This document shows positions 23,170-44,073 of a stretch of DNA of 64,000 bases, one piece after another. The position numbers were made by a program, and so were the translations under genes. The notes beneath the pieces were generated by a model, which searched no databases, was not told the origin of the DNA, and saw only the letters and a program-made list of their open reading frames with translations. Position 1 is the stretch's first letter, and every line of letters starts with the position of its first letter. Origin of the DNA: Ranitomeya imitator (taxonomy: Eukaryota); contig NC_091287.1 of assembly GCF_032444005.1 (NCBI RefSeq), forward strand, positions 503,936,001 to 504,000,000, given 5' to 3'.

Positions 23170-26100
23170 CCACAGACAGGCATCGAAGGCCTAAAATAAT
23201 AACACATGGCTGTAGGCAATTTTAAATTGGTTCCAGGGGTACACGGGCAGCAGTGGTGTGGTCAGTGGAGGCCTAGTGGAAGGAGTGACCACAGACAGGC
23301 ATCGAAGGCCTAAAATATTAACACATGGCTGTAGTCAATTTTAAATTGGTTCCAGGGGTACTTGGGCAGCAGTGCCCTGGTCAGTGTAGTAGTAGTTGAA
23401 AGAATGGACCGCAGACAGGCATCGAAGGCCTAAAATAAAAAAATTGGGCTGGCTGTAGGCAATTTTAAATTGGTTCCAGGGGTACACGGGCAGCAGTGGT
23501 GTGGTCAGTGGAGGCCTAGTGGAAGGAGTGACCGCAGACAGGCATCGAAGGCCTAAAATAATAACACATGGCTGTAGGCAATTTTAAATTGGTTCCAGGG
23601 TTACACGGGCAGCAGTGGTGTGGTCAGTGGAGGCCTAGTGGAAGGAGTGACCGCAGACAGGCATCGAAGGCCTAAAATAATAACACATGGCTGTAGGCAC
23701 TTTTAAATTGGTTCCAGGGGTACATGGGCAGCAGTGTATGGTCAGTGGAAGTCTAGTGGAAGGAGTGACCGCAGACAGGCATCGAAGGCCTAAAATAATA
23801 ACACATGGCTGTAGGCAATTTTAAATTGGTTCCAGGGGTACACGGGCAGCAGTGGTGTGGTCAGTGGAGGCCTAGTGGAAGGAGTGACCGCAGACAGGCA
23901 TCGAAGGCCTAAAATAATAACACATGGCTGTAGGCACTTTTAAATTGGTTCCAGGGGTACATGGGCAGCAGTGTATGGTCAGTGGAAGTCTAGTGGAAGG
24001 AGTGACCGCAGACAGGCATCGAAGGCCTAAAATAATCACACATGGCTGTAGGCAATTTTAAATTGGTTCCAGGGGTACACGGGCAGCAGTGGTGTGGTCA
24101 GTGGAGGCCTAGTGGAAGGAGTGACCGCAGACAGGCTTCGAAGGCCTAACATAACAAACTTGGGCTGGCTGTAGGCACTTTTAAATTGGTTCCAGGGGTA
24201 CATGGGCAGCAGTGTATGGTCAGTGGAAGTCTAGTGGAAGGAGTGACCGCAGACAGGCATCGAAGGCCTAAAATAATCACACATGGCTGTAGGCAATTTT
24301 AAATTGGTTCCAGGGGTACACGGGCAGCAGTGGTGTGGTCAGTGGAGGCCTAGTGGAAGGAGTGACCACAGACAGGCATCGAAGGCCTAAAATATTAACA
24401 CATGGCTGTAGTCAATTTTAAATTGGTTCCAGGGGTACTTGGGCAGCAGTGCCCTGGTCAGTGTAGTAGTAGTTGAAAGAATGGACCGCAGACAGGCATC
24501 GAAGGCCTAAAATACAAAAATTGGGCTGGCTGTAGGCAATTTTAAATTGGTTCCAGGGGTACACGGGCAGCAGTGGTGTGGTCAGTGGAGGCCTAGTGGA
24601 AGGAGTGACCGCAGACAGGCATCGAAGGCCTAAAATAATAACACATGGCTGTAGGCACTTTTAAATTGGTTCCAGGGGTACATGGGCAGCAGTGTATGGT
24701 CAGTGGAAGTCTAGTGGAAGGAGTGACCGCAGACAGGCATCGAAGGCCTAAAATAATCACACATGGCTGTAGGCAATTTTAAATTGGTTCCAGGGGTACA
24801 CGGGCAGCAGTGGTGTGGTCAGTGGAGGCCTAGTGGAAGGAGTGACCACAGACAGGCATCGAAGGCCTAAAATATTAACACATGGCTGTAGTCAATTTTA
24901 AATTGGTTCCAGGGGTACTTGGGCAGCAGTGCCCTGGTCAGTGTAGTAGTAGTTGAAAGAATGGACCGCAGACAGGCATCGAAGGCCTAAAATAAAAAAA
25001 TTGGGCTGGCTGTAGGCAATTTTAAATTGGTTCCAGGGGTACACGGGCAGCAGTGGTGTGGTCAGTGGAGGCCTAGTGGAAGGAGTGACCGCAGACAGGC
25101 ATCGAAGGCCTAAAATAATAACACATGGCTGTAGGCAATTTTAAATTGGTTCCAGGGTTACACGGGCAGCAGTGGTGTGGTCAGTGGAGGCCTAGTGGAA
25201 GGAGTGACCGCAGACAGGCATCGAAGGCCTAAAATAATCACACATGGCTGTAGGCAATTTTAAATTGGTTCCAGGGGTACACGGGCAGCAGTGGTGTGGT
25301 CAGTGGAGGCCTAGTGGAAGGAGTGACCACAGACAGGCATCGAAGGCCTAAAATATTAACACATGGCTGTAGTCAATTTTAAATTGGTTCCAGGGGTACT
25401 TGGGCAGCAGTGCCCTGGTCAGTGTAGTAGTAGTTGAAAGAATGGACCGCAGACAGGCATCGAAGGCCTAAAATAAAAAAATTGGGCTGGCTGTAGGCAA
25501 TTTTAAATTGGTTCCAGGGGTACACGGGCAGCAGTGGTGTGGTCAGTGGAGGCCTAGTGGAAGGAGTGACCGCAGACAGGCATCGAAGGCCTAAAATAAT
25601 AAAACATGGCTGTAGGCAATTTTAAATTGGTTCCAGGGGTACACGGGCAGCAGTGGTCTGGTCAGTGGAAGTCTAGTGGAAGGAGTGACCGCAGACAGGC
25701 TTCGAAGGCCTAACATAACAAACTTGGGCTGGCTGTAGGCACTTTTAAATTGGTTCCAGGGGTACATGGGCAGCAGTGTATGGTCAGTGGAAGTCTAGTG
25801 GAAGGAGTGACCGCAGACAGGCTTCCAAGGCCTAACATAACAAACTTGGGCTGGCTGTAGGCACTTTTAAATTGGTTCCAGGGGTACACGGGCAGCAGTG
25901 GTCTGGTCAGTGGAAGTCTAGTGGAAGGAGTGACCGCAGACAGGCTTCCAAGGCCTAACATAACAAACTTGGGCTGGCTGTAGGCACTTTTAAATTGGTT
26001 CCAGGGGTACACGGGCAGCAGTGGTCTGGTCAGTGGAAGTCTAGTGGAAGGAGTGACCGCAGACAGGCTTCGAAGGCCTAACATAACAAACTTGGGCTGG

Positions 26101-26830
26101 CTGTAGGCACTTTTAAATTGGTTCCAGGGGTACATGGGCAGCAGTGGTCTGGTCAGTGGAAGTCTAGTGGAAGGAGTGACCGCAGACAGGCTTCCAAGGC
26201 CTAACATAACAAAATTGGGCTGGCTGTAGGCACTTTAAATTGGTTCCAGGGGTACATGGGCAGCAGTGTATGGTCAGTGGAAGTCTAGTGGAAGGAGTGA
26301 CCGCAGACAGGCTTCCAAGGCCTAACATAACAAACTTGGGCTGGCTGTAGGCACTTTTAAATTGGTTCCAGGGGTACACGGGCAGCAGTGGTCTGGTCAG
26401 TGGAAGTCTAGTGGAAGGAGTGACCGCAGACAGGCTTCGAAGGCCTAACATAACAAACTTGGGCTGGCTGTAGGCACTTTTAAATTGGTTCCAGGGGTAC
26501 ATGGGCAGCAGTGGTCTGGTCAGTGGAAGTCTAGTGGAAGGAGTGACCGCAGACAGGCTTCCAAGGCCTAACATAACAAAATTGGGCTGGCTGTAGGCAC
26601 TTTAAATTGGTTCCAGGGGTACATGGGCAGCAGTGTATGGTCAGTGGAAGTCTAGTGGAAGGAGTGACGGCAGACAGTCTTCGAAGGCCTAACATAACAA
26701 AATTGGGCTGACTATAGGCACTTTTAAATTGGTTCCAGGGTAACACGGCCAGCAGTGGCCTGGTCAGTGTAGTAGTTGTAGAAAGAAGGGACCGCAGACA
26801 GGCTTCGAAGGCCTAACATAACAAAAATGT
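23170..26830. repeat. ~119-121-bp tandem array (~30 copies) inside the hAT
   Basis: Unit TTCCAGGGGTACACGGGCAGCAGTGG...GAAGGCCTAA...GGCTGTAGGCAATTTTAAATTGG repeated throughout. Confidence 0.95.
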
Positions 26831-27284
26831 CAAAACAATGGTATTGTCAGTGCCAGGCATTGAAGGATGTCAGCGCCTAGACTACACATTGGTGAAGCTG
26901 TGAGAGATAATTTTGCTAGTGGTAGAGCACTGTTTGAGCTGGGGGGGGAACTGGCTTGTGGCCGGCGGTACAGGCACAGGGCCCTTCATATTACAACGGT
27001 GTGTCTGACGTTGGGTGCGCACCACCACCGCCAGAGACACTTTATTGTACTATGAGGGACCCAGTGGCAGTGCCGTCGACCAAAAGCGGCCACACCCACC
27101 TCTTCAGACAAACAGCACTCTCAAGGGTCCAAGCGCAAAGTGGCGATAGCACGGCCCCGTGTGGGGAGTTTGGCCATTTCGTGAGGTGGAAACATGTCGT
27201 ATGCTGGACAATCAGGTGAAGAAAATTACGAGATTGGAAAAGTCATTCAGAATAGTCCACAGGCAAGACCTTTTCATAGGAAAG

Positions 27285-30200
27285 CTAGGTGTCAGCCGGG
27301 CAGGGTGGGGCAAAAGATTTTGAAATCCAGTTGTGGTTCATTTTAATGAAGGTTAGATCATCTACATTTTGGGTAGCCAGACGAGTCCTTTTTTCTGTTA
27401 GTATTGAACCTGCAGCACTGAATACTCTTTCTGATAGGACACTAGCTGCCGGGCAAGCAAGCTCCTGCAATGCATATTCTGCCAATTCTGGCCAGGTGTC
27501 TAATTTGGATGCCCAGTAATCAAATGGGAATGACGGTTGAGGGAGAACGTCGATAAGGGATGAAAAATAGTTTGTAACCATACTGGACAAATGTTGTCTC
27601 CTGTCACTTTGAATTGATGCTGCAGTACCTGTCCTGTCTGCGGTCATAGAAAAATCACTCCACAACCTGGTCAGAAAACCCCTCTGTCCAACGCCACTTC
27701 TGATTTCTGCCCCTCTAACACCTCTGGTCTGCTGGCCCCTGGAGCTCGTGTGAGAACGATCACGGGCGCTGTGTGCAGGGAATGCCAGAAGCAAACGGTC
27801 AACAAGAGTTGATTGTTTTGTTGCTAATATTAGTTCCAAGTTCTCATGTGGCATAATATTTTGCAATTTGCCTTTATAGCGAGGATCAAGGAGGCAGGCC
27901 AACCAGTAATCGTCATCGTTCATCATTTTTGTAATGCGTGTGTCCCTTTTGAGGATACGCAAGGCATAATCCGCCATGTGGGCCAAAGTTCCCGTTGTCA
28001 AATCTGCGGTTGTGCTTGGTTGAGGGGCAGTTGCAGGCAAATCTACGTCACTTGTGTCCCTCAAAAAACCAGAACCCGGCCTTGCCACGCCACCAATTTC
28101 CCGTGCCCCCGGGAAAGCTTCCTCATTAAAAATATACTCATCCCCATCATCCTCCTCATCCTCCACCTCCTCTTCGCCCGGTACCTCGTCATGTACACTG
28201 CCCTGACCAGACAATCGCTGACTGTCATCAAGGCTTTCCTCTTCCTCTGGTGCAGACGCCTGATCCTTTATGTGCGTCAAACTTTGCATCAGCAGACGCA
28301 TTAGGGGGATGCTCATGCTTATTATGGCGTTGTCTGCACTAACCAGCCGTGTGCATTCCTCAAAACACTGAAGGACTTGACACATGTCTTGAATCTTCGA
28401 CCACTGCACACCTGACAACTCCATGTCTGCCATCCTACTGCCTGCCCGTGTATGTGTATCCTCCCACAAAAACATAACAGCCCGCCTCTGTTCGCACAGT
28501 CTCTGAAGCATGTGCAGTGTTGAGTTCCACCTTGTTGCAACGTCTATGATTAGGCGATGCTGGGGAAGGTTCAAAGAACGCTGATAGGTCTGCATACGGC
28601 TGGAGTGTACAGGCGAACGGCGGATATGTGCGCAAAGTCCACGCACTTTGAGGAGCAGGTCGGATAACCCCGGATAACTTTTCAGGAAGCACTGCACCAC
28701 CAGGTTTAAGGTGTGAGCCAGGCAAGGAATGTGTTTCAGTTGGGAAAGGGAGATGGCAGCCATGAAATTCCTTCCGTTATCACTCACTACCTTGCCTGCC
28801 TCAAGATCTACAGTGCCCAGCCACGACTGCGTTTCTTGCTGCAAGAACTCGGACAGAACTTCCGCGGTGTGTCTATTGTCGCCCAAACACTTCATAGCCA
28901 ATACAGCCTGCTGACGTATGCCAGTAGCTGCCCCATAATGGGAGACCTGGTGTGCAACAGTGGCAGGTGCGGATGGAGTGTTTGTGCGACTGCGGTCTGT
29001 GGACGAGCTCTTGCTTCTGCAGGAGGACGAGGAGGAGGAGGAGGAGGAGGGGGTGCGAACGGCTACAGACAACTGTTTACTAGACCGTGGGCTAGGCAGA
29101 ACTGTCCCAAACTTGCTGTCCCCTGTGGACCCTGAATCCACCACATTTACCCAGTGTGCCGTGATGGACACGTAACGTCCCTGGCCATGCCTACTGGTCC
29201 ATGCATCTGTTGTCAGGTGCACCTTTGTGCTCACAGATTGCCTGAGTGCATGGACGATGCGCTCTTTAACATGCTGGTGGAGGGCTGGGATGGCTTTTCT
29301 GGAAAAAAAGTGTCGACTGGGTAGCTCGTAGCGTGGTACAGCGTAGTCCATCAGGTCTTTGAAAGCTTCGCTTTCAACTAACCGGTAGGGCATCATCTCT
29401 AACGAGATTAGTCTAGCTATGTGGGCGTTCAAACCCTGTGTACGCGGATGCGAGGCTAAGTACTTCCTTTTTCTAACCATAGTCTCATGTAGGGTGAGCT
29501 GGACTGGAGAGATGGAGATCGTGGAACTAGCGGGGGTGCCGGTGGACATGGCAGACTGAGAGACGGTGGGAGATGGTATTGTTGCCGCCGGTGCCCTAGA
29601 TGCAGTGTTTCCTACTACGAAACTGGTGATTCCCTGACCCTGACTGCTTTGGCCTGGCAAAGATACCTGCACAGATACAGCAGGTGGTGCGCTAAATGGT
29701 GGTCCTACACTGCCGGAAGGGATGTTGCGTTGATGACTAGCTTCATTGGCCGAGGGTGCAACAACCTTAAGGGACGTTTGGTAGTTAGTCCAAGCTTTCA
29801 AATGCATGGTGGTTAAATGTCTATGCATGCAACTAGTATTGAGACTTTTCAGATTCTGACCTCTGCTTAAGGAAGTAGAACATTTTTGACAGATGACTTT
29901 GCGCTGATCAATTGGATGTTGTTTAAAAAAATGCCAGACTGCACTCTTTCTAGCATCGGATACCTTTTCAGGCATTGCAGACTGAGCTTTAACCGGATGG
30001 CCACGCTGTCCTCCACCAGGTTTTGGCTTTGCCACGCGTTTTGGGCAAGATACGGGCCCGGCAGATGGAACCTGTGGCGATGTTGATGCCTGCTGCGGCC
30101 CCTCCTCCTCCGCTTCAGAACTGCTGCCGCCTGCACCCTGTTCCCCCAATGGCTGCCAATCGGGGTCAAGAACTGGGTCATCTAATAACTCTTCTTGTAC

Positions 30201-30734
30201 CTCCTGCGCAACTTCGTCTGTGTCACCGTGTCGTTCGGTGGTATAGCGTTCGTGATGGGGCAACATAGTCTCATCAGGGTCTGATTCTTGATCAGCACCC
30301 TGCGAGGGCAATGTTGTGGTCTGAGTCAAAGGACCAGCATAGTAGTCTGGCTGTGGCTGTGCGTCAGTGCACTCCATGTCAGATTCAACTTGTAATGGGC
30401 ATGGACTGTTAACTGCTTCACTTTCTAAGCCAGGGACGGTATGTGTAAAGAGCTCCATGGAGTAACCCGTTGTGTCGCCTGCTGCATTCTTCTCTGTTGT
30501 TGTTTTTGCTGAAGAGGACAAGGAAGTGACTTGTCCCTGACCGTGAACATCCACTAACGACGCGCTGCTTTTACTTTTACCAGTTTCACGAGAGGAGGCA
30601 AAAGAGCTAGAGGCTGAGTCAGCAAGATAAGCCAAAACTTGCTCTTGCTGCTCCGGCTTTAAAAGCGGTTTTCCTAATCCCAGAAAAGGGAGCGTTCGAG
30701 GCCTTGTGTAGCCGGACGACGAACCTGGCTCCAC
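27285..30734 (-). CDS. hAT transposase (zf-BED, DDE, C-terminal dimerisation domain); likely true start is the ATG at 30859, cut off by a 1-nt frameshift
   Basis: BED finger SAVWHFF...CQKC...MHRHLTTMH; HLTTDAWTS; VSDNGRN; CLAH; RWNST; ACPAASVLSERVFS. The ORF-track start is a GTG. Confidence 0.93.
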   Translation of the reverse strand: MEPGSSSGYTRPRTLPFLGLGKPLLKPEQQEQVLAYLADSASSSFASSRETGKSKSSASLVDVHGQGQVTSLSSSAKTTTEKNAAGDTTGYSMELFTHTVPGLESEAVNSPCPLQVESDMECTDAQPQPDYYAGPLTQTTTLPSQGADQESDPDETMLPHHERYTTERHGDTDEVAQEVQEELLDDPVLDPDWQPLGEQGAGGSSSEAEEEGPQQASTSPQVPSAGPVSCPKRVAKPKPGGGQRGHPVKAQSAMPEKVSDARKSAVWHFFKQHPIDQRKVICQKCSTSLSRGQNLKSLNTSCMHRHLTTMHLKAWTNYQTSLKVVAPSANEASHQRNIPSGSVGPPFSAPPAVSVQVSLPGQSSQGQGITSFVVGNTASRAPAATIPSPTVSQSAMSTGTPASSTISISPVQLTLHETMVRKRKYLASHPRTQGLNAHIARLISLEMMPYRLVESEAFKDLMDYAVPRYELPSRHFFSRKAIPALHQHVKERIVHALRQSVSTKVHLTTDAWTSRHGQGRYVSITAHWVNVVDSGSTGDSKFGTVLPSPRSSKQLSVAVRTPSSSSSSSSSCRSKSSSTDRSRTNTPSAPATVAHQVSHYGAATGIRQQAVLAMKCLGDNRHTAEVLSEFLQQETQSWLGTVDLEAGKVVSDNGRNFMAAISLSQLKHIPCLAHTLNLVVQCFLKSYPGLSDLLLKVRGLCAHIRRSPVHSSRMQTYQRSLNLPQHRLIIDVATRWNSTLHMLQRLCEQRRAVMFLWEDTHTRAGSRMADMELSGVQWSKIQDMCQVLQCFEECTRLVSADNAIISMSIPLMRLLMQSLTHIKDQASAPEEEESLDDSQRLSGQGSVHDEVPGEEEVEDEEDDGDEYIFNEEAFPGAREIGGVARPGSGFLRDTSDVDLPATAPQPSTTADLTTGTLAHMADYALRILKRDTRITKMMNDDDYWLACLLDPRYKGKLQNIMPHENLELILATKQSTLVDRLLLAFPAHSARDRSHTSSRGQQTRGVRGAEIRSGVGQRGFLTRLWSDFSMTADRTGTAASIQSDRRQHLSSMVTNYFSSLIDVLPQPSFPFDYWASKLDTWPELAEYALQELACPAASVLSERVFSAAGSILTEKRTRLATQNVDDLTFIKMNHNWISKSFAPPCPADT

Positions 30735-31179
30735 AGCTCCAGACTTGGTGCATTATTTTTTTCCCCACGACCACCTGATGCTCCACCACTACCACTACCC
30801 TCATTACCAGCTGACAATGAACGCCCCCGGCCACGACCTCTTCCACTAGACTTCCTCATTGTTTTAAAAACGTAACCAAACTAACGTTATTTGTTGCAGT
30901 CACACAACTTACACGGTGAGCTATAACTTCAGTATGATTTAGCTACCCCTTTACAGGTTGGTGAGACCACAGCGAAAATCAGGCCCAATGTTACACACTC
31001 TTTTTTTGGTGGCTGCAAATTAGAGAGATGCCCCACACGCAGGACTGTCACTGAAGCACAAATGTTAATATTAATGTCACACTATTATTTTTTTTTTATT
31101 TTTATTTTTTTCAGGAACACTTTAGAAACCCCCCCAAAAAAAAAACATTGATTTTTGCAGGGAGAATTTAGAAAACAAA

Positions 31180-32940
31180 TGTAACAAACTATATGCTTTC
31201 TATGGGCCACTGAGTGAGAGATGACGCACACAGGAATCAGGAGTGGCACACAAGCCCAGAGGCCAATATTTTTCTACCAATGATTGATGGAGTTATTTTC
31301 TCTGGTAGATTTTGGAACCCAAATCAAGGAAAAAAAATATAGGCTTTCTATGGACCACAATTGGAGAGAGAGAGAGAGAGAGAGAGATGGCACACCCAGG
31401 AGTCAAGACTGGCACACAAGCAGAAAGGCCAATATTAATCTCCCACTGTTTTTTTTTTTTTTTTTCAGGGAGACTTTAGAAAAAAAAATAATAAAAAAAA
31501 TATGATTTTATCAGGAAGAATTTAGAAACCAAATAAAATAAAATGATTTTTTCAGGGAGAATTTATAAAACAAATAAAACCAAAAATAGGCGTTCTATGG
31601 CCCACTGACTGAGAGATGACGCACCCAGGAGTCAAGACTGGCACACAAGCAGAAAGGCCAATATTAATCTCCCACTGTTTTTTTTTTTTTTTTCAGGGAG
31701 ACTTTAGAAAAAAAAATAATAAAAAAAATATGATTTTGTCAGGAAGAATTTAGAAACCAAATAAAATAAAATGATTTTTTCAGGGAGAATTTAGAAAACA
31801 AATAAAACCAAAAATAGGCGTTCTATGGCCCACTGACTAAGAGAGAGAGAGAGAGATGGAACGCTTAGTACTGGCACACAAGCCCAAAGGGCAATATTAA
31901 TCTCCCTTTTTTTTTCCAGGGAGAATTTCTAAAACCCCCCAAAAAAAAAAAAATAGGCTTTCTATGGCCCACTATTTGTGAGAGAGATGGGACGCTCAGG
32001 ACTGGCACAGACGGCACGCTCAGGACTGGCACAGAAGCCCAGAGGCCAATATTAATCTCCCTTTTTTTCTGGGAGAATTTATAAAACCAAAAAAATATTT
32101 AAATAGGCTTTCTATGGCCCACTATTTGTGAGAGAGATGGCACGCTCAGGACTGGCACAGATGGCACGCTCACAACTGGCACACAAGCCCAGAGGCCAAT
32201 ATTAATCTCCCTTTTTTCAGGGAAAATTTATAAAACCAAAAAAAAAATTAAATAGGCTTTCTATGGCCCACTATTTGTGAGAGAGATGGCACGCTCAGGA
32301 CTGGCACAGATGGCACGCTCACAACTGGCACACAAGCCCAGAGGCCAATATTAATCTCCCTTTTTTCAGGGAAAATTTATAAAACAAAAAAAAAAAATTA
32401 AATAGGCTTTCTATGGCCCACTATTTGTGAGAGAGATGGCACGCTCAGGACTGGCACAGATGGCACGCTCACAACTGGCACACAAGCCCAGAGGCCAATA
32501 TTAATCTCCCTTTTTTTCAGGGAGAATTTATAAAACCAAAAAAAAAATTAAATAGGCTTTCTATGGCCCACTATTTGTGAGAGAGATGGCACGCTCAGGG
32601 CTGGCACAGATGGCACGCTCAGGACTGGCACACAAGCCCAGAGGCCAATATTAATCTCCCTTTTTTTCAGGGAGAATTTATAAAACCCCAAAAAAAATAA
32701 AATAGGCTTTCTATGGCCCACTATTTGTGAGAGAGATGGCACACTCAGGACTGGCACACAAGCCCAAAGGCCAATATTAATCTCCCACTGTATTTTTATC
32801 AGGGAGAATTTATACACCCCACAAAAAAAAATACAGAAAAATGAAAAGGCTTTCTATGGCCCACTATGTGAGAGAGATGGCACACACAGGGATGGCACTC
32901 TAGCAGAAATGCCAAATTGCCAATCTTAATCTCCCACCCA
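31180..32940. repeat. ~120-150-bp tandem repeats upstream of the transposase
   Basis: Recurrent GGCTTTCTATGGCCCACT...GAGAGATGGCAC...GGCCAATATTAATCTCCC. Confidence 0.9.
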
Positions 32941-33429
32941 AAAAAAAAAAAAAAAAAACACAGGGAATGTCCTACAATTACTATCTCCCTGCCTGCAGTA
33001 ATCTCAGCCAGGTATGGCAGGCAGCTACTATCTCCCTGCCTGCAGTAATCTCAGCCAGGTATGGCAGGCAGCAATAAGGAGTGGACTGATGCACAAATGA
33101 AATAAAAAGTGTGGACAAACAAAAAAGATAGCTGTGCAGAAAGGAAGGAACAAGAGGATTTGTGCTTTGAAAAAAGCAGTTGGTTTGCACAGCGGCGTAC
33201 ACACAGCAATGCAGCTATCAGGGAGCCTTCTAGGGCAGCCCAATGAGCTACAGCGCTGAGGGGAAAAAAAAAAAAAAAAAACTTCCACTGTCCCTGCACA
33301 CCGAGGGTGGTGTTGGACAGTGCAAATCGCTGCAGCACAAGCGGTTTTGTGGTTAATGGACCCTGCCTAACGCTATCCCTGCTTCTGACAAAGTGGCAGC
33401 AACCTCTCCCTAAGCTCAGATCAGCAGCA

Positions 33430-33495
33430 GTAAGATGGCGGTCAGCGGGAACGCCTCTTTATAGCCCCTGTGACGTCGCAGACAGCAAGCCAATC
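33430..33495 (-). promoter_or_regulatory. Putative hAT transposase promoter
   Basis: CCAAT 33490-33494, CRE-like TGACGTC 33471-33477, TATAAA 33458-33463 (minus), YY1-like CCGCCATCTT 33432-33441, in the right order and pointing to the transposase. Confidence 0.6.
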
Positions 33496-34414
33496 ACTGC
33501 AATGCCCTTCTCTAAGATGGTGGGGACCAGGACCTATGTCATCACGCTGCCCACACTCTGCGTTTACCTTCATTGGCTGAGAAATGGCGCTTTTCGCGTC
33601 ATTGAAACGCGACTTTGGCGCGAAAGTCGCGTACCGCATGGCCGACCCCGCACAGGGGTCGGATCGGGTTTCATGAAACCCCGACTTAGCCAAAAGTCGG
33701 CGACTTTTGAAAATGTTCGACCCGTTTCACTCAACCCTAGTGACAGTATTTGTTTCTCGTATGTGTTATTATTCGGTCACTATGTGGTGGCAATATGTGG
33801 TCTGGTCATGGTGTGACAGCATTGTGGTATTATTATTCGATCACAATGTGATGGTAATATGTGTTCTGCTCATAGAGTGGCAGTTTTTCTCTCTTATATG
33901 TGGTATTATTCAGTCACTATGTGGTTGTATGCTGTGGTGGTATTTGTCCCTTGTATGCGGTATTATTGGTCATTTAAAAAAAATGATTGTGACCCATTCA
34001 CTTAAAGAAAAATAAAGAAAAATATACCTAAAAAGAGAACAGGATAGTTTAACAAATATTTAATAGGCTAGAGTAGAATAGGGCCCTGCCAAAAAAGTCT
34101 ACCTTGTCATGGTGGAAGGCTTAAGAAATGTTTTTGCCAACACCAAAGTTGATTGCTATGTATGTGATATGGTGTTCAATGGGAATTTTTAATATGTAAT
34201 TGGTAAGGACGTGGTGCTGAAGTACAGTTTTTCCAAGAGTAGGCTGTAGGACTGTGAAAGGCTTGAGGGGTGGTGGAGGTGAAGCTGGGGTGGGGCCTGG
34301 GTGGTGTCTCAAAAATGTTGCCAGTACGAAGCCCTGAAATTCCTAGTGGCAGCCATATGTATATATATAACATATACAGTATAGTATATAGACGACACAA
34401 CATTGACAGCAGCA

Positions 34415-36170: not shown

Positions 36171-37010
36171 GCATTGCGTATTTGAAATCTGCAACGTGTT
36201 AATTTCTACGAGGGTGTGTGTGGATTTTCCCCATAGAATTACATTGTATGCGGAAAATCCACAGGTAAAAGACACATATGGTGCGAAAACGCACTAAAAA
36301 CACATGTAAACCGCTAAACACTAAAATAATAAAGTTATGTCGCAGCAAAATATCAGGAAATATAAAAAACAAAGCAGTTTTACTTAAAACAGGACATACC
36401 AAAAAAAGACAAAAATAGCAGCATCAAAAACGTGAGAAAAATGCATATTAAAAAATACACTTAAAAACACAATGAAAAAAACGCAAGTAGCCTGACTTAT
36501 CTAATAGGTGTAGAAAATTTGCATCATCAAAAGCTGATCAAATACTCGTCGCCTTTTAGTTCTCAACAAGAAAGGAGAAGCTGTGCTACAGTGCATAAAA
36601 AATGTGGCATTAAAAATAAACACACTATTTAAAATAGTAAAAAGAGAATATTAATAAAACACTAATTATGAGCCACGATTTTGCATTTTATACCCTTGAA
36701 AAGTATTCTCTTCTCATAAAGAGCCTTGATGATGCAGAATATAGTGTGGTATCGCCCCTTCCCGGCAGTCAGTGTTTTATTGCAGGCAATCCATTGGAAA
36801 TGAACAAAAGAACAGTTTTAGGATCTTTTCTCCTGTCTGTACAATAGAGCCGTCATTATACTGGGTTATTTCAAGCTTTCTACAGCTAAAATCTTTACAT
36901 TATACTGAAATGAAGCCAGTGTAGGATTCAGAAACTCAGGAAATTACTTTTACAATGCAAAAAAAATGAATGGCTTCTGATTTTATTTATTTTTTTAGAA
37001 TTTTCTTTAC

Positions 37011-37063
37011 AAGCCATTGTAAACTCAGAAAAATTGTTGGCTGAAAGTTGTGACTGCCGGTGT
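37011..37063 (-). CDS. Candidate 53-nt exon holding a possible start codon (ATG at 37017)
   Basis: Strong acceptor TTTATTTTATTCATTTTCCTAG, donor CTT|GTAAAG, Kozak context ACAATGG; joins in frame to 17755. Confidence 0.45.
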
Positions 37064-37164
37064 CTAGGAAAATGAATAAAATAAAAGATAGGGAAGAAAA
37101 TAAAAATTAGGTGATAATTAATCTGATTCTGGCAAGTTTTCTATTCAGCTGTTTTCTGTCTATT

Positions 37165-37920
37165 TCTGGTTAAGTAGGATAACATCAGCACTCGGATAAA
37201 TGAGTTCATTCTCTGTTGTCGGTATTAATGCTGGAAAAAGAGGAACGTATACTGGATTGCGATTTATTTACCAACGCGTTTCAGAGTTCCAAACGTCTTC
37301 AGGACAAACCACAGTATAAGTGGTAAGTGGGATAACATCAGAACTGGAATGAATAGGGTAATTCTGCACTGCCGGTATTAATGATGGATAAAGAGGACCG
37401 CATACAGGAATGCGGTTTATTATCCAACGTGTTTCGGAGTTCCAAATTTCTTCAGCACAAACCACAGTCTAATTGGTAAGTGGGATAACAGAGAACTGGA
37501 ATGAATAGGTTAATTCTGCGCTGCCCGTATTAATGATAGACAAAGTGGACCATATTCAGGAATGCGGTTCATTAGTCAACGCGTTTCAGAGTTCCAAACC
37601 TCTTCATCAGGACAGACCACAGTCTAAGTGGTAGGTGGGATAACATAGAACTGGAATGAATAGGGTAATTCTGCACTGCCAGGACTAATGATGGATAAAG
37701 AGGACCATATACAGGAATGCGGTTTACCAGTCGACACGTTTCGGAGTTCCAAACTTCTCCATCAGGACAAACCACAGTCTAAGTGGTAGGTGGGATAACA
37801 TAGAACTGGAATGAATAGGGACTAATGATGGATAAAGAGGACCGTATACAGGAATGCGGTTGACCAGTCAACACGTTTCGGAGTTCCAAACTTCTCCATC
37901 AGGACAAACCACAGTGGTAG
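37165..37920 (-). ncRNA. Tandem array of five ~153-155-bp units, each with a Type I hammerhead ribozyme motif (retrozyme-like)
   Basis: Cores at 37271-37305, 37424-37458, 37575-37613, 37730-37768, 37867-37905. Copy 3 reads GUC-CUGAUGA-AGAG-GUUUGGAA-CUCU-GAAA-CGCG-UU-GAC on the minus strand. Unit starts (GGATAAC) at 37177, 37330, 37483, 37638, 37793. Confidence 0.85.
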
Positions 37921-38240
37921 TTGGCACGACAGTCATAATGGCCATTATTACACCTCCTACAGTCCAGATTTAAAAGTCAAGGCTCCTTAAACCCAGTGCA
38001 AACTCTGATCTCTTTATATGGGTGCATTCCCACTACTGTATTTTAAGTTCATGGAAAATCTGACCTCACAATGACGGCACTGATCAAATTGTTTTTATTC
38101 TTGTGTGAATTTAGCCTATGGGGCAGAGGGACCTTTCACACAGAATTTTTTTACATGGATTTTGACAATCCACATCTAGATCCAGTTCACATACTCTTTT
38201 TTGAATAGGATTCTTATTAATTGGGAAAATACGCCTACAA

Positions 38241-38584
38241 GGCCTCATTCACATGTTTAAACACATATGTGGAAAAATGGTACTGGTGTCATCAGTGTAT
38301 GGTCCGTGTGTCCGTTTTTAGCATCGGTGTGTCATCAGTGATTTTCATGGATGGATAAAGAAAGAAATAAAGGACAAAGCTTCTCTTATGCTTAGCAATG
38401 TGAAATACTGACCGCACACGAATGTGTTTATCACAGACCCATAGACTTGTAACCCTCTTCATTCGTGCTGCCAGAAAAAAAAAAAAAGAGGTGAATAGAA
38501 CCATAGATTATAATAGGTACATATTCAATCCATGGAAAAACACAGATATGACACAGATAACAATGCGGACACCTAAATAATGCC
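38241..38584. mobile_element. Harbinger-type MITE (diverged); a smaller one at ~38645-38830
   Basis: GGCCTCATTCAC...AATAATGCC termini followed by TAA; the small copy matches 63757-63947. Confidence 0.55.
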
Positions 38585-38924
38585 TAATGCACATGGTGAT
38601 TTTTTTCCACGTGGAAAATTCTTGAGTTGTCTCTGCATAAAGCCACATTAAAACGTTCAGTATTTGGTCTGTATTTTACACCAGTATTTGTAAGCCAAAA
38701 CCAGGAGTGGAACAATCAGAGGAAAAGTGTAATAAAAACATGTCAACACTTCTACATTTATCACCCACTCCTGGTTTTGGCTCACAAATACTGATGGAAA
38801 ATACTGACCAAATACTGAACATAACCATTTTAAAGTCTGTATTCTTATCCATGTATAGTGCTAAGTATAACAGAGTACACCCCCTTTGAAAAGTAACGCT
38901 TTTCTAAATTCATTTTTCTAAGTG

Positions 38925-39100
38925 CATGATGCCTACAGTGAAACATGGTGGTGGCAATGTCATGTGGGGCTGCATGAGTGTTGCTGGTGTCTGAATTCAC
39001 AGATATAGTGCTCTATACTAAATATAGTTGCCAACTTGTTCATTCCATGCCCTGAAGACTTGGTGCTGTCCTTAAAAGTCATGGAAGTCATAGAAAATGC
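38925..39100 (+). mobile_element. Tc1 transposase fragment
   Basis: TVKHGGGNVMWGCMSVAG in + strand translation. Confidence 0.6.
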
Positions 39101-39219
39101 TAGATGTAACATAGTAACATAGTAACATAGTTAGTAAGGCCGAAAAAAGACATTTGTCCATCCAGTTCAGCCTATATTCCATCATAATAAATCCCCAGAT
39201 CTACGTCCTTCTACAGAAC

Positions 39220-42000
39220 CTAATAATTGTATGATACAATATTGTTCTGCTCCAGGAAGACATCCAGGCCTCTCTTGAACCCCTCGACTGAGTTCGCCAT
39301 CACCACCTCCTCAGGCAAGCAATTCCAGATTCTCACTGCCCTAACAGTAAAGAATCCTCTTCTATGTTGGTGGAAAAACCTTCTCTCCTCCAGACGCAAA
39401 GAATGCCCCCTTGTGCCCGTCACCTTCCTTGGTATAAACAGATCCTCAGCGAGATATTTGTATTGTCCCCTTATATACTTATACATGGTTATTAGATCGC
39501 CCCTCAGTCGTCTTTTTTCTAGACTAAATAATCCTAATTTCGCTAATCTATCTGGGTATTGTAGTTCTCCCATCCCCTTTATTAATTTTGTTGCCCTCCT
39601 TTGTACTCTCTCTAGTTCCATTATATCCTTCCTGAGCACCGGTGCCCAAAACTGGACACAGTACTCCATGTGCGGTCTAACTAGGGATTTGTACAGAGGC
39701 AGTATAATGCTCTCATCATGTGTATCCAGACCTCTTTTAATGCACCCCATGATCCTGTTTGCCTTGGCAGCTGCTGCCTGGCACTGGCTGCTCCAGGTAA
39801 GTTTATCATTAACTAGGATCCCCAAGTCCTTCTCCCTGTCAGATTTACCCAGTGGTTTCCCATTCAGTGTGTAATGGTGATATTGATTCCCTCTTCCCAT
39901 GTGTATAACCTTACATTTATCATTGTTAAACCTCATCTGCCACCTTTCAGCCCAAGTTTCCAACTTATCCAGATCCATCTGTAGCAGAATACTATCTTCT
40001 CTTGTATTAACTGCTTTACATAGTTTTGTATCATCTGCAAATATCGATATTTTACTGTGTAAACCTTCTACCAGATCATTAATGAATATGTTGAAGAGAA
40101 CAGGTCCCAATACTGACCCCTGCGGTACCCCACTGGTCACAGCGACCCAGTTAGAGACTATACCATTTATAACCACCCTCTGCTTTCTATCACTAAGCCA
40201 GTTACTAACCCATTTACACACATTTTCCCCCAGACCAAGCATTCTCATTTTGTGTACCAACCTCTTGTGCGGCACGGTATCAAACGCTTTGGAAAAATCG
40301 AGATATACCACGTCCAATGACTCACCGTGGTCCAGTCTATAGCTTACCTCTTCATAAAAACTGATTAGATTGGTTTGACAGGAGCGATTTCTCATAAACC
40401 CATGCTGATATGGAGTTAAACAGTTATTCTCATTGAGATAATCCAGAATAACATCCCTCAGAAACCCTTCAAATATTTTACCAACAATAGAGGTTAGACT
40501 TACTGGCCTATAATTTCCAGGTTCACTTTTAGAGCCCTTTTTGAATATTGGCACCACATTTGCTATGCGCCAGTCCTGCGGAACAAACCCTGTCGCTATA
40601 GAGTCACTAAAAATAAGAAATAATGGTTTATCTATTACATTACTTAGTTCTCTTAGTACTCGTGGGTGTATGCCATCCGGACCCGGAGATTTATCTATTT
40701 TAATCTTATTTAGCCGGTTTCGCACCTCTTCTTGGGTTAGATTGGTGACCCTTAATATAGGGTTTTCATTGTTTCTTGGGATTTCACCTAGCATTTCATT
40801 TTCCACCGTGAATACCGTGGAGAAGAAGGTGTTTAATATGTTAGCTTTTTCCTCGTCATCTACAACCATTCTTTCCTCACTATTTTTTAAGGGGCCTACA
40901 TTTTCAGTTTTTATTCTTTTACTATTGATATAGTTGAAGAACAGTTTGGGATTAGTTTTACTCTCCTTAGCAATGTGCTTCTCTGTTTCCTTTTTGGCAG
41001 CTTTAATTAGTTTTTTAGATAAAGTATTTTTCTCCCTATAGTTTTTTAGAGCTTCAATGGTGCCATCCTGCTTTAGTAGTGCAAATGCTTTCTTTTTACT
41101 GTTAATTGCCTGTCTTACTTCTTTGTTTAGCCACATTGGGTTTTTCCTATTTCTAGTCCTTTTATTCCCACAAGGTATAAACCGCTTACACTGCCTATTT
41201 AGGATGTTCTTAAACATTTCCCATTTATTATCTGTATTCTCATTTCTGAGGATATTGTCCCAGTCTACCAGATTAAGGGCATCTCTAAGCTGTTCAAACT
41301 TTGCCTTCCTAAAGTTCAATGTTTTTGTGACTCCCTGACAAGTCCCCCTAGTGAAAGACAGGTGAAACTGCACAATATTGTGGTCGCTATTTCCTAAATG
41401 CCCAACCACCTGCAGATTTGTTATTCTGTCAGGTCTATTAGATAGTATTAGGTCTAAAAGTGCTGCTCCTCTGGTTGGATTCTGCACCAATTGTGAAAGA
41501 TAATGTTTCTTGGTTATTAGCAGAAACCTGTTGCCTTTATGGGTTTCACAGGTTTCTGTTTCCCAGTTAATATCCGGGTAGTTAAAGTCCCCCATAACCA
41601 GGACCTCATTATGGGTTGCAGCTTCATCTATCTGCTTTAGAAGTAGACTTTCCATGCTTTCTGTTATATTTGGGGGTTTGTAACAGACCCCAATGAGAAT
41701 TTTGTTACCATTTTTCCCTCCATGAATTTCAACCCATATGGACTCGACATCCTCATTCCCTTCGCTAATATCCTCCCTTAAAGTGGACTTTAGACAAGAC
41801 TTTACATAGAGACAAACCCCTCCTCCTCTCCGATTTTTACGATCCTTTCTAAACAGACTGTAACCCTGTAAGTTAACTGCCCAGTCATAGCTTTCATCTA
41901 ACCATGTCTCGGTTATTCCCACTATGTCAAAGTTACCTGTAGATATTTCTGCTTCTAGTTCTTCCATCTTGTTTGTCAGGCTTCTGGCGTTTGCGAGCAT
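39220..42000 (-). CDS. CR1 ORF2: APE endonuclease and reverse transcriptase, 926 aa, uninterrupted
   Basis: GITETWLD, GDFNYPDINW, LDFSKAFDTVPH, GVPQGSVLGP, FADD. Confidence 0.95.
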   Translation of the reverse strand: MLANARSLTNKMEELEAEISTGNFDIVGITETWLDESYDWAVNLQGYSLFRKDRKNRRGGGVCLYVKSCLKSTLREDISEGNEDVESIWVEIHGGKNGNKILIGVCYKPPNITESMESLLLKQIDEAATHNEVLVMGDFNYPDINWETETCETHKGNRFLLITKKHYLSQLVQNPTRGAALLDLILSNRPDRITNLQVVGHLGNSDHNIVQFHLSFTRGTCQGVTKTLNFRKAKFEQLRDALNLVDWDNILRNENTDNKWEMFKNILNRQCKRFIPCGNKRTRNRKNPMWLNKEVRQAINSKKKAFALLKQDGTIEALKNYREKNTLSKKLIKAAKKETEKHIAKESKTNPKLFFNYINSKRIKTENVGPLKNSEERMVVDDEEKANILNTFFSTVFTVENEMLGEIPRNNENPILRVTNLTQEEVRNRLNKIKIDKSPGPDGIHPRVLRELSNVIDKPLFLIFSDSIATGFVPQDWRIANVVPIFKKGSKSEPGNYRPVSLTSIVGKIFEGFLRDVILDYLNENNCLTPYQHGFMRNRSCQTNLISFYEEVSYRLDHGESLDVVYLDFSKAFDTVPHKRLVHKMRMLGLGENVCKWVSNWLSDRKQRVVINGIVSNWVAVTSGVPQGSVLGPVLFNIFINDLVEGLHSKISIFADDTKLCKAVNTREDSILLQMDLDKLETWAERWQMRFNNDKCKVIHMGRGNQYHHYTLNGKPLGKSDREKDLGILVNDKLTWSSQCQAAAAKANRIMGCIKRGLDTHDESIILPLYKSLVRPHMEYCVQFWAPVLRKDIMELERVQRRATKLIKGMGELQYPDRLAKLGLFSLEKRRLRGDLITMYKYIRGQYKYLAEDLFIPRKVTGTRGHSLRLEERRFFHQHRRGFFTVRAVRIWNCLPEEVVMANSVEGFKRGLDVFLEQNNIVSYNY

Positions 42001-42137
42001 GCAGTTTAGAGGATTTTGTTTTGTTCCAATCTCTTCACTGTGGATTGTTTTAGAAATGTTCTTACCTCCCTTCTGAGTATGTTTTCCTGGGTCGTCTTTG
42101 TTCGAGTCTAATGTTTTTCTTCCTGTCCCCTCTTCTT

Positions 42138-42520
42138 CTAGTTTAACGCCCTCCTGATGAGTGTAGCGAGTCTTCTGGCGAATGTGTGTTTCCCAGGTTT
42201 GTTGAGGTGTAGTCCGTCTCTGGCGAGGAGTCCATCATACCAGTAATTCACACCGTGGTCCAGGAATCCAAATCCTTGTTGTCTGCACCATCGTCTTAGC
42301 CAGTTGTTTGCATCAAGGATCCTGTTCCATCTCCTGGTGCCATGCCCGTCTACTGGAAGGATAGAAGAAAAAACTACCTGTGCATCCAGTTCCTTTACTT
42401 TCTTCCCCAACTCTTCAAAGTCCTTGCAGATTGTCGGTAGGTCCTTCCTTGCCGTGTCATTGGTGCCAACATGTATCAGAAGAAATGGGTGGACGTCCTT
42501 GGAGCTGAAGAGCTTTGGTA
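42138..42520 (-). pseudogene. CR1 ORF1 C-terminal SGNH-esterase fragment
   Basis: LLIHVGTND...DGLHLN motifs; N-terminus missing. Confidence 0.85.
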
Positions 42521-42539
42521 AAAAGAAAGTCTGATTATC

Positions 42540-44073
42540 CATTTAATTTCTCTCTCCTCTGATGTGATCGCACTTCAAAGGAGAGAGAAACAGGGTGCCT
42601 CGATCCCCCCCTGGTACCTCCGTTGTCCCTGCAATCCCTATTATGTCCCCCAGCCGCCAACGTCTTCTTCCAGAAGAAAATGGTTGGCACATGCGCAGTG
42701 CGCCTGCCGAGACCTGCCAGCTGGCACCCTGCAACAATAGAAAATTTTTCCTATTGGTTCATTTTGATCACTGTGATAGACCCTATCACAATGATCAAAA
42801 TAATAAAATAGTAAATTAAACCCCCTTTTAACACCCCCTTAGTTAGGTAAAAATAATGAAAAAAAATATATATTTATTTCAATTTTTTCATTGGGTTAGA
42901 GTTGGGCTAAAGTGAGTTGGGGGTAAAGTTAGGGTTAGGGTTGGGCTAAAGTGAGTAGGGCTAAAGGTAGAGTTAGGGTTGGGCTAAAGTAAGTTGGGCT
43001 AAAGTTAGGGTTAGGGCTAGGGTTAAGGTTAGGGCTAGGGTTATGGTTAGAGTTGTGGTTATGGTTGGGATTAAGATTAGGGTTGGGATTAGGGTTAGGG
43101 GTGTATTAGGGTTAGGTTTGTTGTTAGGGTTATGCATAGGGTTGGTATTAGGGTTAGGGGTGTGTTGGGGTTAGGGTTGGAGTTAGAATTGGGGCATTTC
43201 CACTGTTTAAGTACATCAGGGGGTCTCCAAATACGACATGGCGCCACCATTGATTCCAGCCAATTTTGCGTTCAAAAAGTCACGGTGCTCCCTCTCTTCT
43301 GAGCCTTGCAACCAAACAGTGGCTTTTCCTCACATATGGGGTATCGGCTTACTCAGAAGAAATTGCACAACAAATTTTGTGGTCCATTTTCTCCTGATAC
43401 CCTTGTGAAAATAAAAAAATGGTTCCAAAGTAAATTTTTTGTGAAAAAAGTAAAATGTTCATTTGTTCCTTCCACTTTGCTTTAGTTCTTGTGAAGCACC
43501 TGAAGGGTTCATAAACTTCTTGAATATAGTTTTGAGCACCTTGAGGGGTGCAGTTTTTAGAATGGTGTCACTTTTGGGTATTTTCTGTTATATTGACCCC
43601 CTGAACTCGCTTCAAATGTGAGGTGGTCCCTAAAAAAATGGTTTTGTAAATTTTGTTGGAAAAATGAGAAATTGCTTGTCAAATTTTAACCCTTATAACT
43701 TCCTGACAAAAAAAAAATGTTGTTTCCAAAATTGTGCTGATGTAAAGTTGACATGTGGGAAATGTTATTTATTAACTATTTTGTCTGACACGACTCTCTG
43801 GTTTAAGGGCATAGAAATTCAAAGTTTGAAAATTGCAAAATTTTCACAATTTTTGCCATATTTCGTTTTTTTTTCATAAATAAACGCAAGTTATATTGAA
43901 GAAATGTTATCACTACCATGAAGTACAATATGTCACGAAAAAAAACAGTCTGAGAATCAGCGGGATCCGTTAAAGCGTTCCAGAGCTATAACTTCATAAA
44001 GTGACAGTGGTCAGAATTGTACAAATTGGCTTGGTCATTAAGTACCAAATTGGCTCTGTCACTAAGGGGTTAA
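42540..44073. mobile_element. piggyBac-like non-autonomous element, right part
   Basis: Ends AAGGGG|TTAA at 44070-44073; left end not visible beyond the CR1 junction. Confidence 0.55.
42885..43195 (+). repeat. Degenerate telomere-like (TTAGGG) array inside the piggyBac-like element
   Basis: TTAGGG mixed with TTGGG, CTAGGG and GGGCTAAAG variants. Confidence 0.85.

What the first reader, a model, noticed from the sequence alone, without database searches (positions are those of the whole stretch)
37165..37920. Tandem hammerhead-ribozyme array (candidate frog non-LTR retrozyme, ~154-nt unit)
Seen: five units (periods 153, 153, 155, 155; last unit has a deletion), each with CUGAN(GA/GG)...GAAA on the minus strand. 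Copy 3 has the canonical core CUGAUGA, 4-bp stem II AGAG/CUCU, palindromic stem III ACGCGU and stem I GUC/GAC; copy 4 has the GUC triplet but a CUGAUGG core. In copy 4 stem I extends past a 4-nt bulge (UGUGGUUU/AAACCGCA), the usual Type I layout. Established: minimal Type I hammerheads with palindromic stem III in short tandem repeats define newt satellite 2 and metazoan non-LTR retrozymes; they cleave as dimers, give small circular RNAs and are linked to Penelope-like elements. Inference: a non-coding self-cleaving retroelement with an unusually short unit. No single copy is fully canonical, so this locus may be decayed.
Basis: partly seen in the sequence, partly recalled or inferred. Interest (0 to 1): 0.85.

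Follow-up and report, generated by a model that had tools for sequence, protein, structure and literature searches.

The report
Decayed frog hammerhead-ribozyme repeat array
This is a real five-unit tandem repeat derived from a self-cleaving hammerhead RNA element of a kind already well described in frogs, but it is an old, worn-out copy in which only one unit still has an intact-looking ribozyme, so it is an ordinary relic and not a discovery.

Summary
Window 37165-37927 is a minus-strand tandem array of five ~155-bp units (74-98% identical), each starting with a hammerhead-like domain. Only unit 3 (37622-37468) fits a complete type I hammerhead: CUGAUGA core, 4-bp helix II, GAAA, helix III of one A-U pair around the palindromic CGCG, GUU site, helix I GUC/GAC plus a 6-bp outer helix. 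Chance gives ~0.0007 such motifs per window. Units 1-2 have G at core position 9 and a helix II mismatch; units 4-5 lost helix II through a 3-nt deletion.

No Rfam hammerhead model matches, and the five units show no compensatory changes. Public contigs of the same species and of a second organism show that only the hammerhead domain has many relatives in the genome (~20-180x single-copy depth). The rest of the unit is essentially single-locus. Both array edges lie on organism B contigs that continue into ~96%-identical flanks, so the array is old. No target-site duplication, Penelope ORF or transcript of this array was found.

It belongs to the animal non-LTR retrozyme / Penelope-type hammerhead repeats, described in all sampled amphibians with units of 51-972 bp, so ~154 nt is not unusually short. 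The scan already noted younger hammerhead retrozymes elsewhere in this genome. Interest is low.

The parts
37165..37927 (-). Whole tandem array: five ~155-bp units flanked on both sides by single-copy DNA
   Evidence: Summed contig depth is single-copy (about 14 and 9) at 37069-37202 and 37940-38207, and raised only inside the array.
37778..37914 (-). Unit 1 (137 nt, 18-nt internal deletion). The hammerhead-like domain has core CUGAUGG (G at position 9), helix II GAAGUU/AACUCC with one A.C mismatch in the register with an extra base after position 9, and a GUU site.
37623..37777 (-). Unit 2 (155 nt). Same defects as unit 1, but it keeps the GUC triplet (37735-37733) in a CpG context and has the best outer helix I (UGUGGUUU/AAACCGCA).
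37468..37622 (-). Unit 3 (155 nt), the only unit with a complete hammerhead layout
37563..37621 (-). Unit 3 hammerhead domain:
- helix I 5' strand 37621-37611
- core CUGAUGA 37610-37604
- helix II 37603-37600 with 37591-37588, loop 37599-37592
- GAA 37587-37585
- helix III A-CGCG-U 37584-37579
- position 17 (U) at 37578, so the predicted cut lies between 37578 and 37577
- helix I 3' strand: GAC 37577-37575, 4-nt bulge 37574-37571, outer strand 37570-37563
   Evidence: Descriptor hits. The minimum-energy fold reproduces helices I and II. The related-contig depth peak lies here, 1170 in bin 37538-37604.
37315..37467 (-). Unit 4 (153 nt). A 3-nt deletion leaves CUGAAGA but removes helix II. Helix III has a CpG-to-CpA change and inner helix I has changed (GGA).
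37165..37314 (-). Unit 5, the most diverged (74-78% to the others). It has the same 3-nt deletion and no helix II, and its tail fades into the flank.

Best explanation
The array is an old, fixed and mostly inactivated tandem copy of a hammerhead-bearing non-coding repeat. It belongs to the class known as animal non-LTR retrozymes, whose ribozymes are related to those in the terminal repeats of Penelope-like elements.

How the class works is taken from the literature, not shown here. A multimeric transcript is made. Hammerhead domains of neighbouring units pair through their palindromic helix III into a double hammerhead and cut after position 17. The unit-length RNA is circularised by a host ligase and is thought to be copied back into DNA by a Penelope-like reverse transcriptase.

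At this locus only unit 3 keeps a fold compatible with cleavage (predicted cut between 37578 and 37577, minus strand). Units 1-2 carry a core change and a helix II mismatch. Units 4-5 lost helix II. The array most likely no longer self-processes efficiently and persists as neutral DNA. Its unit structure was partly reshaped in place: units 1 and 2 are a recent 98%-identical duplication.
For: Shown:
- The five-unit array is real.
- Unit 3 passes a strict amphibian-type descriptor: CUGANGA, helix II of at least 4 bp, GAAA, A + palindromic tetraloop + U, non-G at position 17, helix I of at least 3 bp. Chance expectation is 0.0007 per window, and no shuffle of 1500 also had the 6-bp outer helix.
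- Helix III (one A-U pair around CGCG) is the amphibian signature described in PMC7229834 and PMC4209133.
- Several core differences between units sit in CpG contexts, so ACGCGU and GUC|GAC are the likely older states.
- In the register with one extra base after position 9, units 1-2 have G10.1-C11.1 and a 6-bp helix II with one mismatch. About 94% of the related contig depth at 37881 carries the C-to-U change that repairs that mismatch. This is the Penelope-type design of PMC4209133.
- Summed contig depth is 240-1170 over the hammerhead-domain bins of units 1-3, reaching ~2500 at 37594. Elsewhere in the array it is 33-101, and in the flanks 9-14. Both DNA runs show this.
- Contigs of two runs guessed to be RNA touch essentially only unit 3's hammerhead domain. 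They diverge from it at 37575, 3 nt past the predicted cut, into a related CCGCAUUC-containing strand.
- Organism B contigs run from ~96%-identical flanks across both array edges.
- A unit 3 homodimer is predicted 9.5 kcal/mol more stable than two monomers, with the palindrome paired between molecules and helix II kept.

Inferred: membership of the retrozyme life cycle, the Penelope dependence, and present inactivity.
Against: - No Rfam hammerhead model matches at gathering score, at E<=10 on 1.1 kb, or at E<=10 on unit 3 alone.
- Only 1 of 5 units is complete.
- Among the five units there are no compensatory changes, and helix II pairs in only 65% of cells.
- Unit 3's fold is no more stable than shuffles, z = 0.06.
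- No target-site duplication lies at the edges.
- No Penelope-like ORF is in the neighbourhood. The adjacent retroelement is an APE+RT LINE.
- The non-ribozyme ~90 nt of the unit has almost no relatives at 80% likeness or more.
- No listed RNA run holds the array.
- I could not read the sequences of the related genomic copies, only depth and a truncated table of differences.
Confidence: 0.75

Rival explanations
1. The array is an ordinary local satellite or minisatellite that grew by unequal crossing-over. The hammerhead-like letters in one unit are a coincidence, and the element never encoded a ribozyme.
For: - No Rfam hit.
- A loose descriptor finds 0.2 motifs per window by chance.
- Only one unit is complete.
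- No compensatory changes.
- No target-site duplication.
- The whole unit appears single-locus and no transcript was seen.
Against: - The strict descriptor gives 0.0007 per window by chance.
- The depth excess is confined to the hammerhead domain, in two organisms.
- Relatives carry the change that completes helix II.
- Helix III is exactly the amphibian type.
- CpG-decay logic points back to GUC and ACGCGU.
Confidence: 0.1
2. The array is a still-active retrozyme. It would be transcribed, cleave as dimers and yield ~155-nt linear and circular RNAs.
For: - Unit 3 is complete and unit 2 keeps GUC.
- Dimer pairing is favourable.
- The array lies on the same strand as, and downstream of, a LINE with intact ORFs, which could supply read-through transcription. 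This last point is speculation.
Against: - Cleavage at both ends of a unit needs two competent, neighbouring domains. The neighbours of unit 3 have G at position 9 plus a helix II mismatch (unit 2) or no helix II (unit 4).
- Units differ by up to 26%, which means an old array.
- The putative RNA contigs cover essentially only the domain shared with other families, not the rest of the array.
- No listed RNA run holds it.
Confidence: 0.05
3. The array is what remains of tandem terminal repeats (pLTRs) of an autonomous Penelope-like element whose coding part was lost or truncated. It would then not be a separate non-autonomous retrozyme family.
For: - The units 1-2 design (extra base after position 9, G10.1-C11.1, 6-bp helix II, palindromic helix III) is the Penelope-type minimal hammerhead.
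- The 2026 preprint finds retrozymes and pLTRs to be sister sequences.
- Paralogous contigs show an opposite-strand joint at the domain, 37614 with 37916. Inverted arms are typical of Penelope-style insertions.
Against: - No RT or GIY-YIG remnant lies within several kb. Flanking ORFs have no Pfam domain, and the nearby RT belongs to an APE-type LINE that ends near 39100.
- Both flanks are single-copy.
- Five head-to-tail units are more typical of retrozyme arrays.
Confidence: 0.1

Closest known systems
Animal non-LTR retrozymes (Cervera & de la Pena 2020, PMC7229834; Li, Clavereau & Pollet 2026, bioRxiv 10.64898/2026.07.22.740005)
   Same: - Head-to-tail tandem repeat of a short, non-coding, low-GC unit (43% GC here).
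- Each unit begins with a type I hammerhead domain.
- Helix III is amphibian-style: one base pair plus a palindromic tetraloop, which implies action as a dimer.
- The host is a frog-type genome with Penelope-like elements. That last point rests on earlier scan notes, which I did not check.
   Different: - Only one of five ribozymes is intact.
- No target-site duplication.
- No dispersed copies of the whole unit at 80% likeness or more.
- No RNA evidence.
- The unit length sits at the low end of the 150-450 bp range first described, but well inside the 51-972 bp range later reported.
Minimal hammerheads of Penelope-like element terminal repeats (Cervera & de la Pena 2014, PMC4209133)
   Same: [quoted passage not shown]
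- Such motifs number thousands per frog genome (~9000 in X. tropicalis) and cleave poorly in vitro.
   Different: - No Penelope RT/GIY-YIG ORF accompanies this array.
- Units 1-2 have G, not A, at position 9.
- Unit 3 fits the canonical register (no extra base, 4-bp helix II) better than the Penelope register.
Newt / salamander satellite 2 hammerhead repeats (about 330-350 bp; as summarised in PMC7229834)
   Same: Tandem satellite-like organisation, a type I hammerhead with very weak palindromic helix III, and dimer-dependent cleavage.
   Different: The unit here is half as long, there is a single small locus in place of very high copy number, it is a frog and not a caudate genome, and no transcripts were seen.

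Membership tests
Hammerhead ribozyme, type I | Conserved core CUGANGA ... GAAA with a non-G at position 17 after U16.1 | tested here: met
   Met in unit 3 only: CUGAUGA 37610-37604, GAAA 37587-37584, U at position 17 (37578). Units 1-2 have G at position 9. Units 4-5 keep CUGAAGA only through a 3-nt deletion that destroys helix II.
Hammerhead ribozyme, type I | Three helices around the core, helix I open-ended (helix II hairpin, helix III hairpin or dimer, helix I formed by the flanks) | tested here: met
   Unit 3 has helix II of 4 bp, helix III of A-U plus CGCG, and helix I of 3 bp + 4-nt bulge + 6 bp. Across the five units 86.7% of cells pair, against 29-42% for slid controls. That comparison is biased, because the structure was derived from one of these sequences.
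Hammerhead ribozyme, type I | Match to the curated Rfam covariance models (Hammerhead_1 and relatives) | tested here: not met
   No hammerhead family appears at gathering score, at E<=10 on 37000-38100, or at E<=10 on unit 3 alone. I could not test whether the models tolerate a 1-bp helix III.
Hammerhead ribozyme, type I | Compensatory base changes supporting the helices | tested here: inconclusive
   There are 0 pairs with changes on both sides among five closely related units, too few and too similar sequences to decide. One informative indirect case exists: the 11.2 C-to-U in related contigs completes helix II.
Hammerhead ribozyme, type I | Self-cleavage | not testable with these tools
   Needs in vitro transcription of monomer and dimer constructs.
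Animal non-LTR retrozyme | Head-to-tail tandem repeats of a short non-coding unit, each with a type I hammerhead | tested here: met
   Five units of 137-155 bp, each starting with the hammerhead-like domain. ORFs across the array have no Pfam domain. Only one domain is intact.
Animal non-LTR retrozyme | Mobile: dispersed copies in the genome, and insertions bounded by target-site duplications when young | tested here: not met
   No shared word of 7 nt or more at the two edges. The non-ribozyme part of the unit has depth compatible with this locus alone, plus a few ~80% relatives. This is expected for an old family, because copies more than 20% diverged are invisible at the threshold used.
Animal non-LTR retrozyme | Expressed as unit-length linear and circular RNA | tested here: inconclusive
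   No listed RNA run holds the stretch. Contigs of two putative RNA runs cover essentially only the shared hammerhead domain of unit 3. Contigs cannot show absence.
Penelope-type minimal hammerhead | Extra nucleotide between 9 and 10.1, G10.1-C11.1, long helix II, palindromic 15.2-16.2 (PMC4209133) | tested here: met
   Units 1-2 read extra A, then G-C, A.C, A-U, G-C, U-A, U-A, with helix III ACGUGU. However, position 9 is G. Unit 3 fits this register poorly (G.U, A.C, G.U, then three pairs).
Penelope-type minimal hammerhead | Located in the terminal repeat of an element encoding RT + GIY-YIG endonuclease | tested here: not met
   The only RT nearby (39220-42000, minus strand) carries an Exo_endo_phos (APE) endonuclease and belongs to a LINE with an esterase-like ORF1. 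Flanking ORFs have no domains.

The most novel reading that the evidence does not exclude
Unit 3 might still cleave, together with a neighbouring unit or in trans with the abundant related hammerhead RNAs of the genome. The locus would then release a ~155-nt RNA, which would be among the shortest vertebrate retrozyme RNAs. Alternatively, the array has been kept in two species for some host use. Nothing seen here favours either idea beyond the intact look of unit 3 and the presence of the array in both organisms.
Probability: 0.05. Interest if true: 0.35.

Novelty: new member of a known kind. Interest (0 to 1): 0.15.

Why it matters
It matters little beyond annotation. The locus adds one old, short-unit (~155 bp) example to the hammerhead repeats already catalogued in amphibians. 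It shows how such arrays decay: CpG transitions in helix III and at the cleavage triplet, a core substitution, and a small deletion that removes helix II. It also carries a practical lesson. Rfam hammerhead models do not pick up this amphibian / Penelope-type design with a 1-bp helix III, so a descriptor search or read depth over the domain is needed to recognise such relics.

Tried and rejected
- Rfam, whole window at gathering score, the array at E<=10 and unit 3 alone at E<=10: no hammerhead. The only weak hits are chance snoRNA matches.
- One metagenome scan with a degenerate core / loop II / GAAAC pattern, hoping for host-derived frog DNA: four contigs, all chance matches with unrelated flanks and no helix II. 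They were not used.
- The search of earlier findings by sequence was blank.
- The supplement of the 2026 preprint that is held as text is an oligo order form without family sequences.
- Target-site duplication search at the array edges: nothing.
- Penelope remnant search: the 926-aa ORF upstream is an APE+RT LINE, not a Penelope-like element. Ten flanking ORFs have no Pfam domain.
- Pair counting on five units: uninformative, with no double changes.
- Thermodynamic stability of the domains against shuffles: not distinctive for unit 3.
- I considered that units 1-2 carry a 1-nt insertion in the core, or a 2-nt position 7. Without the relatives' sequences I could not choose between these and the register with an extra base after position 9.

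Full report

Yes. On the minus strand the stretch 37927-37165 is a head-to-tail array. Tandem Repeats Finder gives period 155, 3.9 copies and 86% matches for 37220-37820. Cutting at the recurring CTGTGGT gives five units:
- u1 37914-37778 (137 nt, an 18-nt internal deletion)
- u2 37777-37623 (155 nt)
- u3 37622-37468 (155 nt)
- u4 37467-37315 (153 nt)
- u5 37314-~37165 (degenerate)

Pairwise identity runs from 98% (u1/u2) to 74-78% (u5 against the rest). A 17-nt word of the domain occurs five times in the window, all here, against 0.12 expected. Only the list of periods is slightly off: the spacings are 153, 155, 155 and 137.

**2. Is it a hammerhead?**

The curated test fails. No Rfam hammerhead family appears at gathering score on the window, at E<=10 on 1.1 kb, or at E<=10 on the 76 nt of unit 3 alone.

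A loose home-made descriptor finds only unit 3, and random sequence yields 0.2 such hits per window, so that result alone is weak. A strict descriptor follows the published amphibian layout: CUGANGA, helix II of at least 4 bp, GAAA, A + palindromic tetraloop + U, non-G at position 17, helix I of at least 3 bp. It again finds only unit 3. It is met 0.0007 times per shuffled window, and never together with a 6-bp outer helix I in 1500 shuffles.

Unit 3's minimum-energy fold reproduces helices I and II but is no more stable than shuffles, z = 0.06. A unit 3 homodimer is predicted 9.5 kcal/mol better than two monomers. In it the palindrome pairs between the molecules and helix II is kept, which fits the double-hammerhead mode.

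**3. The other units.**

Units 1 and 2 have G where A9 should be. In the canonical register their helix II does not form. PMC4209133 reports a different register as characteristic of Penelope-type hammerheads: one extra base between positions 9 and 10.1, a G10.1-C11.1 pair, a long helix II and a palindromic helix III. In that register units 1 and 2 read A, then GAAGUU/AACUCC, six pairs with a single A.C mismatch at 10.2/11.2.

Units 4 and 5 share a 3-nt deletion that leaves CUGAAGA but abolishes helix II.

Eight of the 51 variable columns have the CpG-to-TpG or CpG-to-CpA signature. They include the 11.1 position of helix II, two positions of helix III and the cleavage triplet. ACGCGU and GUC|GAC are therefore the likely older states.

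Among the five units there is no pair with changes on both sides, and helix II is paired in only 65% of cells. The sample is too small and too related to decide anything.

**4. Evidence from outside the window.**

*Depth.* The flanks are single-copy: summed depth about 14 and 9 in X1 and about 10 in X3. Inside the array the bins holding the non-ribozyme parts have 33-101, about what cross-laying of five units would give. The bins holding the hammerhead domains of units 1-3 have 240 (unit 2), 397 (unit 1) and 1170 (unit 3), with about 2500 at 37594. Both organisms give nearly the same figures. So the ~60-nt ribozyme domain has many relatives in the genome, while the rest of the unit is essentially confined to this locus.

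*Differences.* At 37881 about 94% of the related depth (39 contigs in X1, 47 in X3) carries the C-to-U change (minus strand) that turns CUCC into CUUC. This completes the 6-bp helix II of the Penelope-type register. No difference of 10% or more is listed within unit 3's domain, so the relatives laid there appear to share its letters. The table was truncated, so this is an inference.

*Putative RNA runs.* Their contigs lie essentially only on unit 3's domain. Three X14 contigs leave the local sequence at 37575, 3 nt beyond the predicted cut, and continue into a different but related helix I strand that contains CCGCAUUC. This shows transcribed relatives, if those runs are RNA. It does not show transcription of this array.

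*Age.* Organism B contigs run from flanks about 96% identical across both array edges: 36600-37375 with 30 differences, and 37749-38312 with 22. The array therefore predates the split of the two organisms, and I saw no sign that it is an insertion polymorphism.

*Inverted copies.* A few paralogous contigs join 37614 to 37916 on opposite strands. This hints at inverted arrangements of the domain elsewhere.

**5. Surroundings.**

I found no target-site duplication. No tRNA gene lies between the array and the LINE, and no Rfam family reaches gathering score anywhere in the window.

The 926-aa ORF upstream on the same strand (39220-42000) is an APE endonuclease + RT. It is preceded by an ORF with a GDSL/SGNH esterase-type domain (42138-42542). 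The element appears to end in an 8-bp microsatellite near 39076-39131. This is a CR1/L2-like LINE, not a Penelope-like element. ORFs flanking and crossing the array have no Pfam domains. Array GC is 43%, window 44%.

**6. What it is and how it works.**

The best reading (about 0.75) is an old, fixed, largely inactivated array of a hammerhead-bearing non-coding repeat of the animal non-LTR retrozyme / Penelope-type class. The class mechanism comes from PMC7229834, PMC4209133 and the 2026 preprint, and none of it is shown here:
- a multimeric transcript is made;
- neighbouring hammerheads dimerise through the palindromic helix III and cut after position 17;
- a host tRNA ligase circularises the unit-length RNA;
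- Penelope-like reverse transcriptase is presumed to copy it back into DNA.

Here only unit 3 could contribute a competent domain, and its neighbours are defective. Release of a unit-length RNA from this locus is therefore unlikely.

The rivals are a chance motif in a plain satellite (0.10), a still-active retrozyme (0.05) and a remnant of tandem Penelope terminal repeats (0.10).

**7. Comparison with what is known, and novelty.**

Type I hammerheads in short tandem repeats of 150-450 bp are described across metazoans and as ~170-400-nt circular RNAs (PMC7229834). Non-LTR retrozymes were found in all seven sampled Amphibia, with consensus lengths of 51-972 bp and 57 families in Xenopus, and 8 of 9 tested Xenopus dimers did not cleave (bioRxiv 10.64898/2026.07.22.740005). 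About 9000 minimal hammerheads occur in X. tropicalis (PMC4209133). A ~154-nt unit is therefore not unusually short, and the kind is known.

Earlier notes of this scan, which I did not check, report several young hammerhead retrozyme arrays (316-, 353- and 384-nt units) and Penelope-like elements elsewhere in this same genome, which one note calls a poison frog. The scan has thus found this kind before, on other DNA of this genome.

This locus is a further, decayed member. Interest 0.15.

Noticed in passing
window 38208-38542 (+ strand), A-run at 38476-38489: A hyper-abundant short repeat lies ~300 bp from the array. Summed contig depth reaches ~61,700 against ~9-14 for single-copy flanks, in both organisms, and it is abundant in the putative RNA runs. 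It ends in an A-run and contains CATCAGTGT / GTGTCC motifs. Other genomic copies show 'goes back 41-55' joints, meaning a variable internal ~41-nt tandem. It looks like a SINE-like retroposon with an internal minisatellite. ARAGORN finds no tRNA there.
   Followed up: partly
window 39076-42542 (- strand): An apparently intact LINE. ORF1 is 134 aa with a GDSL/SGNH esterase-type domain (42138-42542). ORF2 is 926 aa with APE endonuclease + RT (39220-42000). The 3' end is probably marked by 8-9-bp microsatellites at 39076-39131. This is a CR1/L2-like architecture on the same strand as, and upstream of, the hammerhead array.
   Followed up: partly
window 27285-30734 (- strand): A 1149-aa ORF with a BED zinc finger and a hAT C-terminal dimerisation domain. 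It is the transposase of the large hAT element that another first-stage note places at 19980-33739.
   Followed up: partly
window 38655-38820: A 56-nt inverted repeat, 93% complementary, with arms 54 nt apart: a MITE-like or hairpin element between the LINE end and the abundant repeat.
   Followed up: no
window 37614 / 37916 (joint seen in paralogous contigs, not in the window itself): Two X1 contigs and one X3 contig join the 5' part of the hammerhead domain to itself on opposite strands. This suggests head-to-head (fold-back) copies of related hammerhead repeats elsewhere in the genome.
   Followed up: no
window 36935-37068: An A/T-rich stretch with moderately raised depth that is also hit by one putative RNA run (X10 depth 108). 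It is probably low-complexity cross-matching.
   Followed up: no
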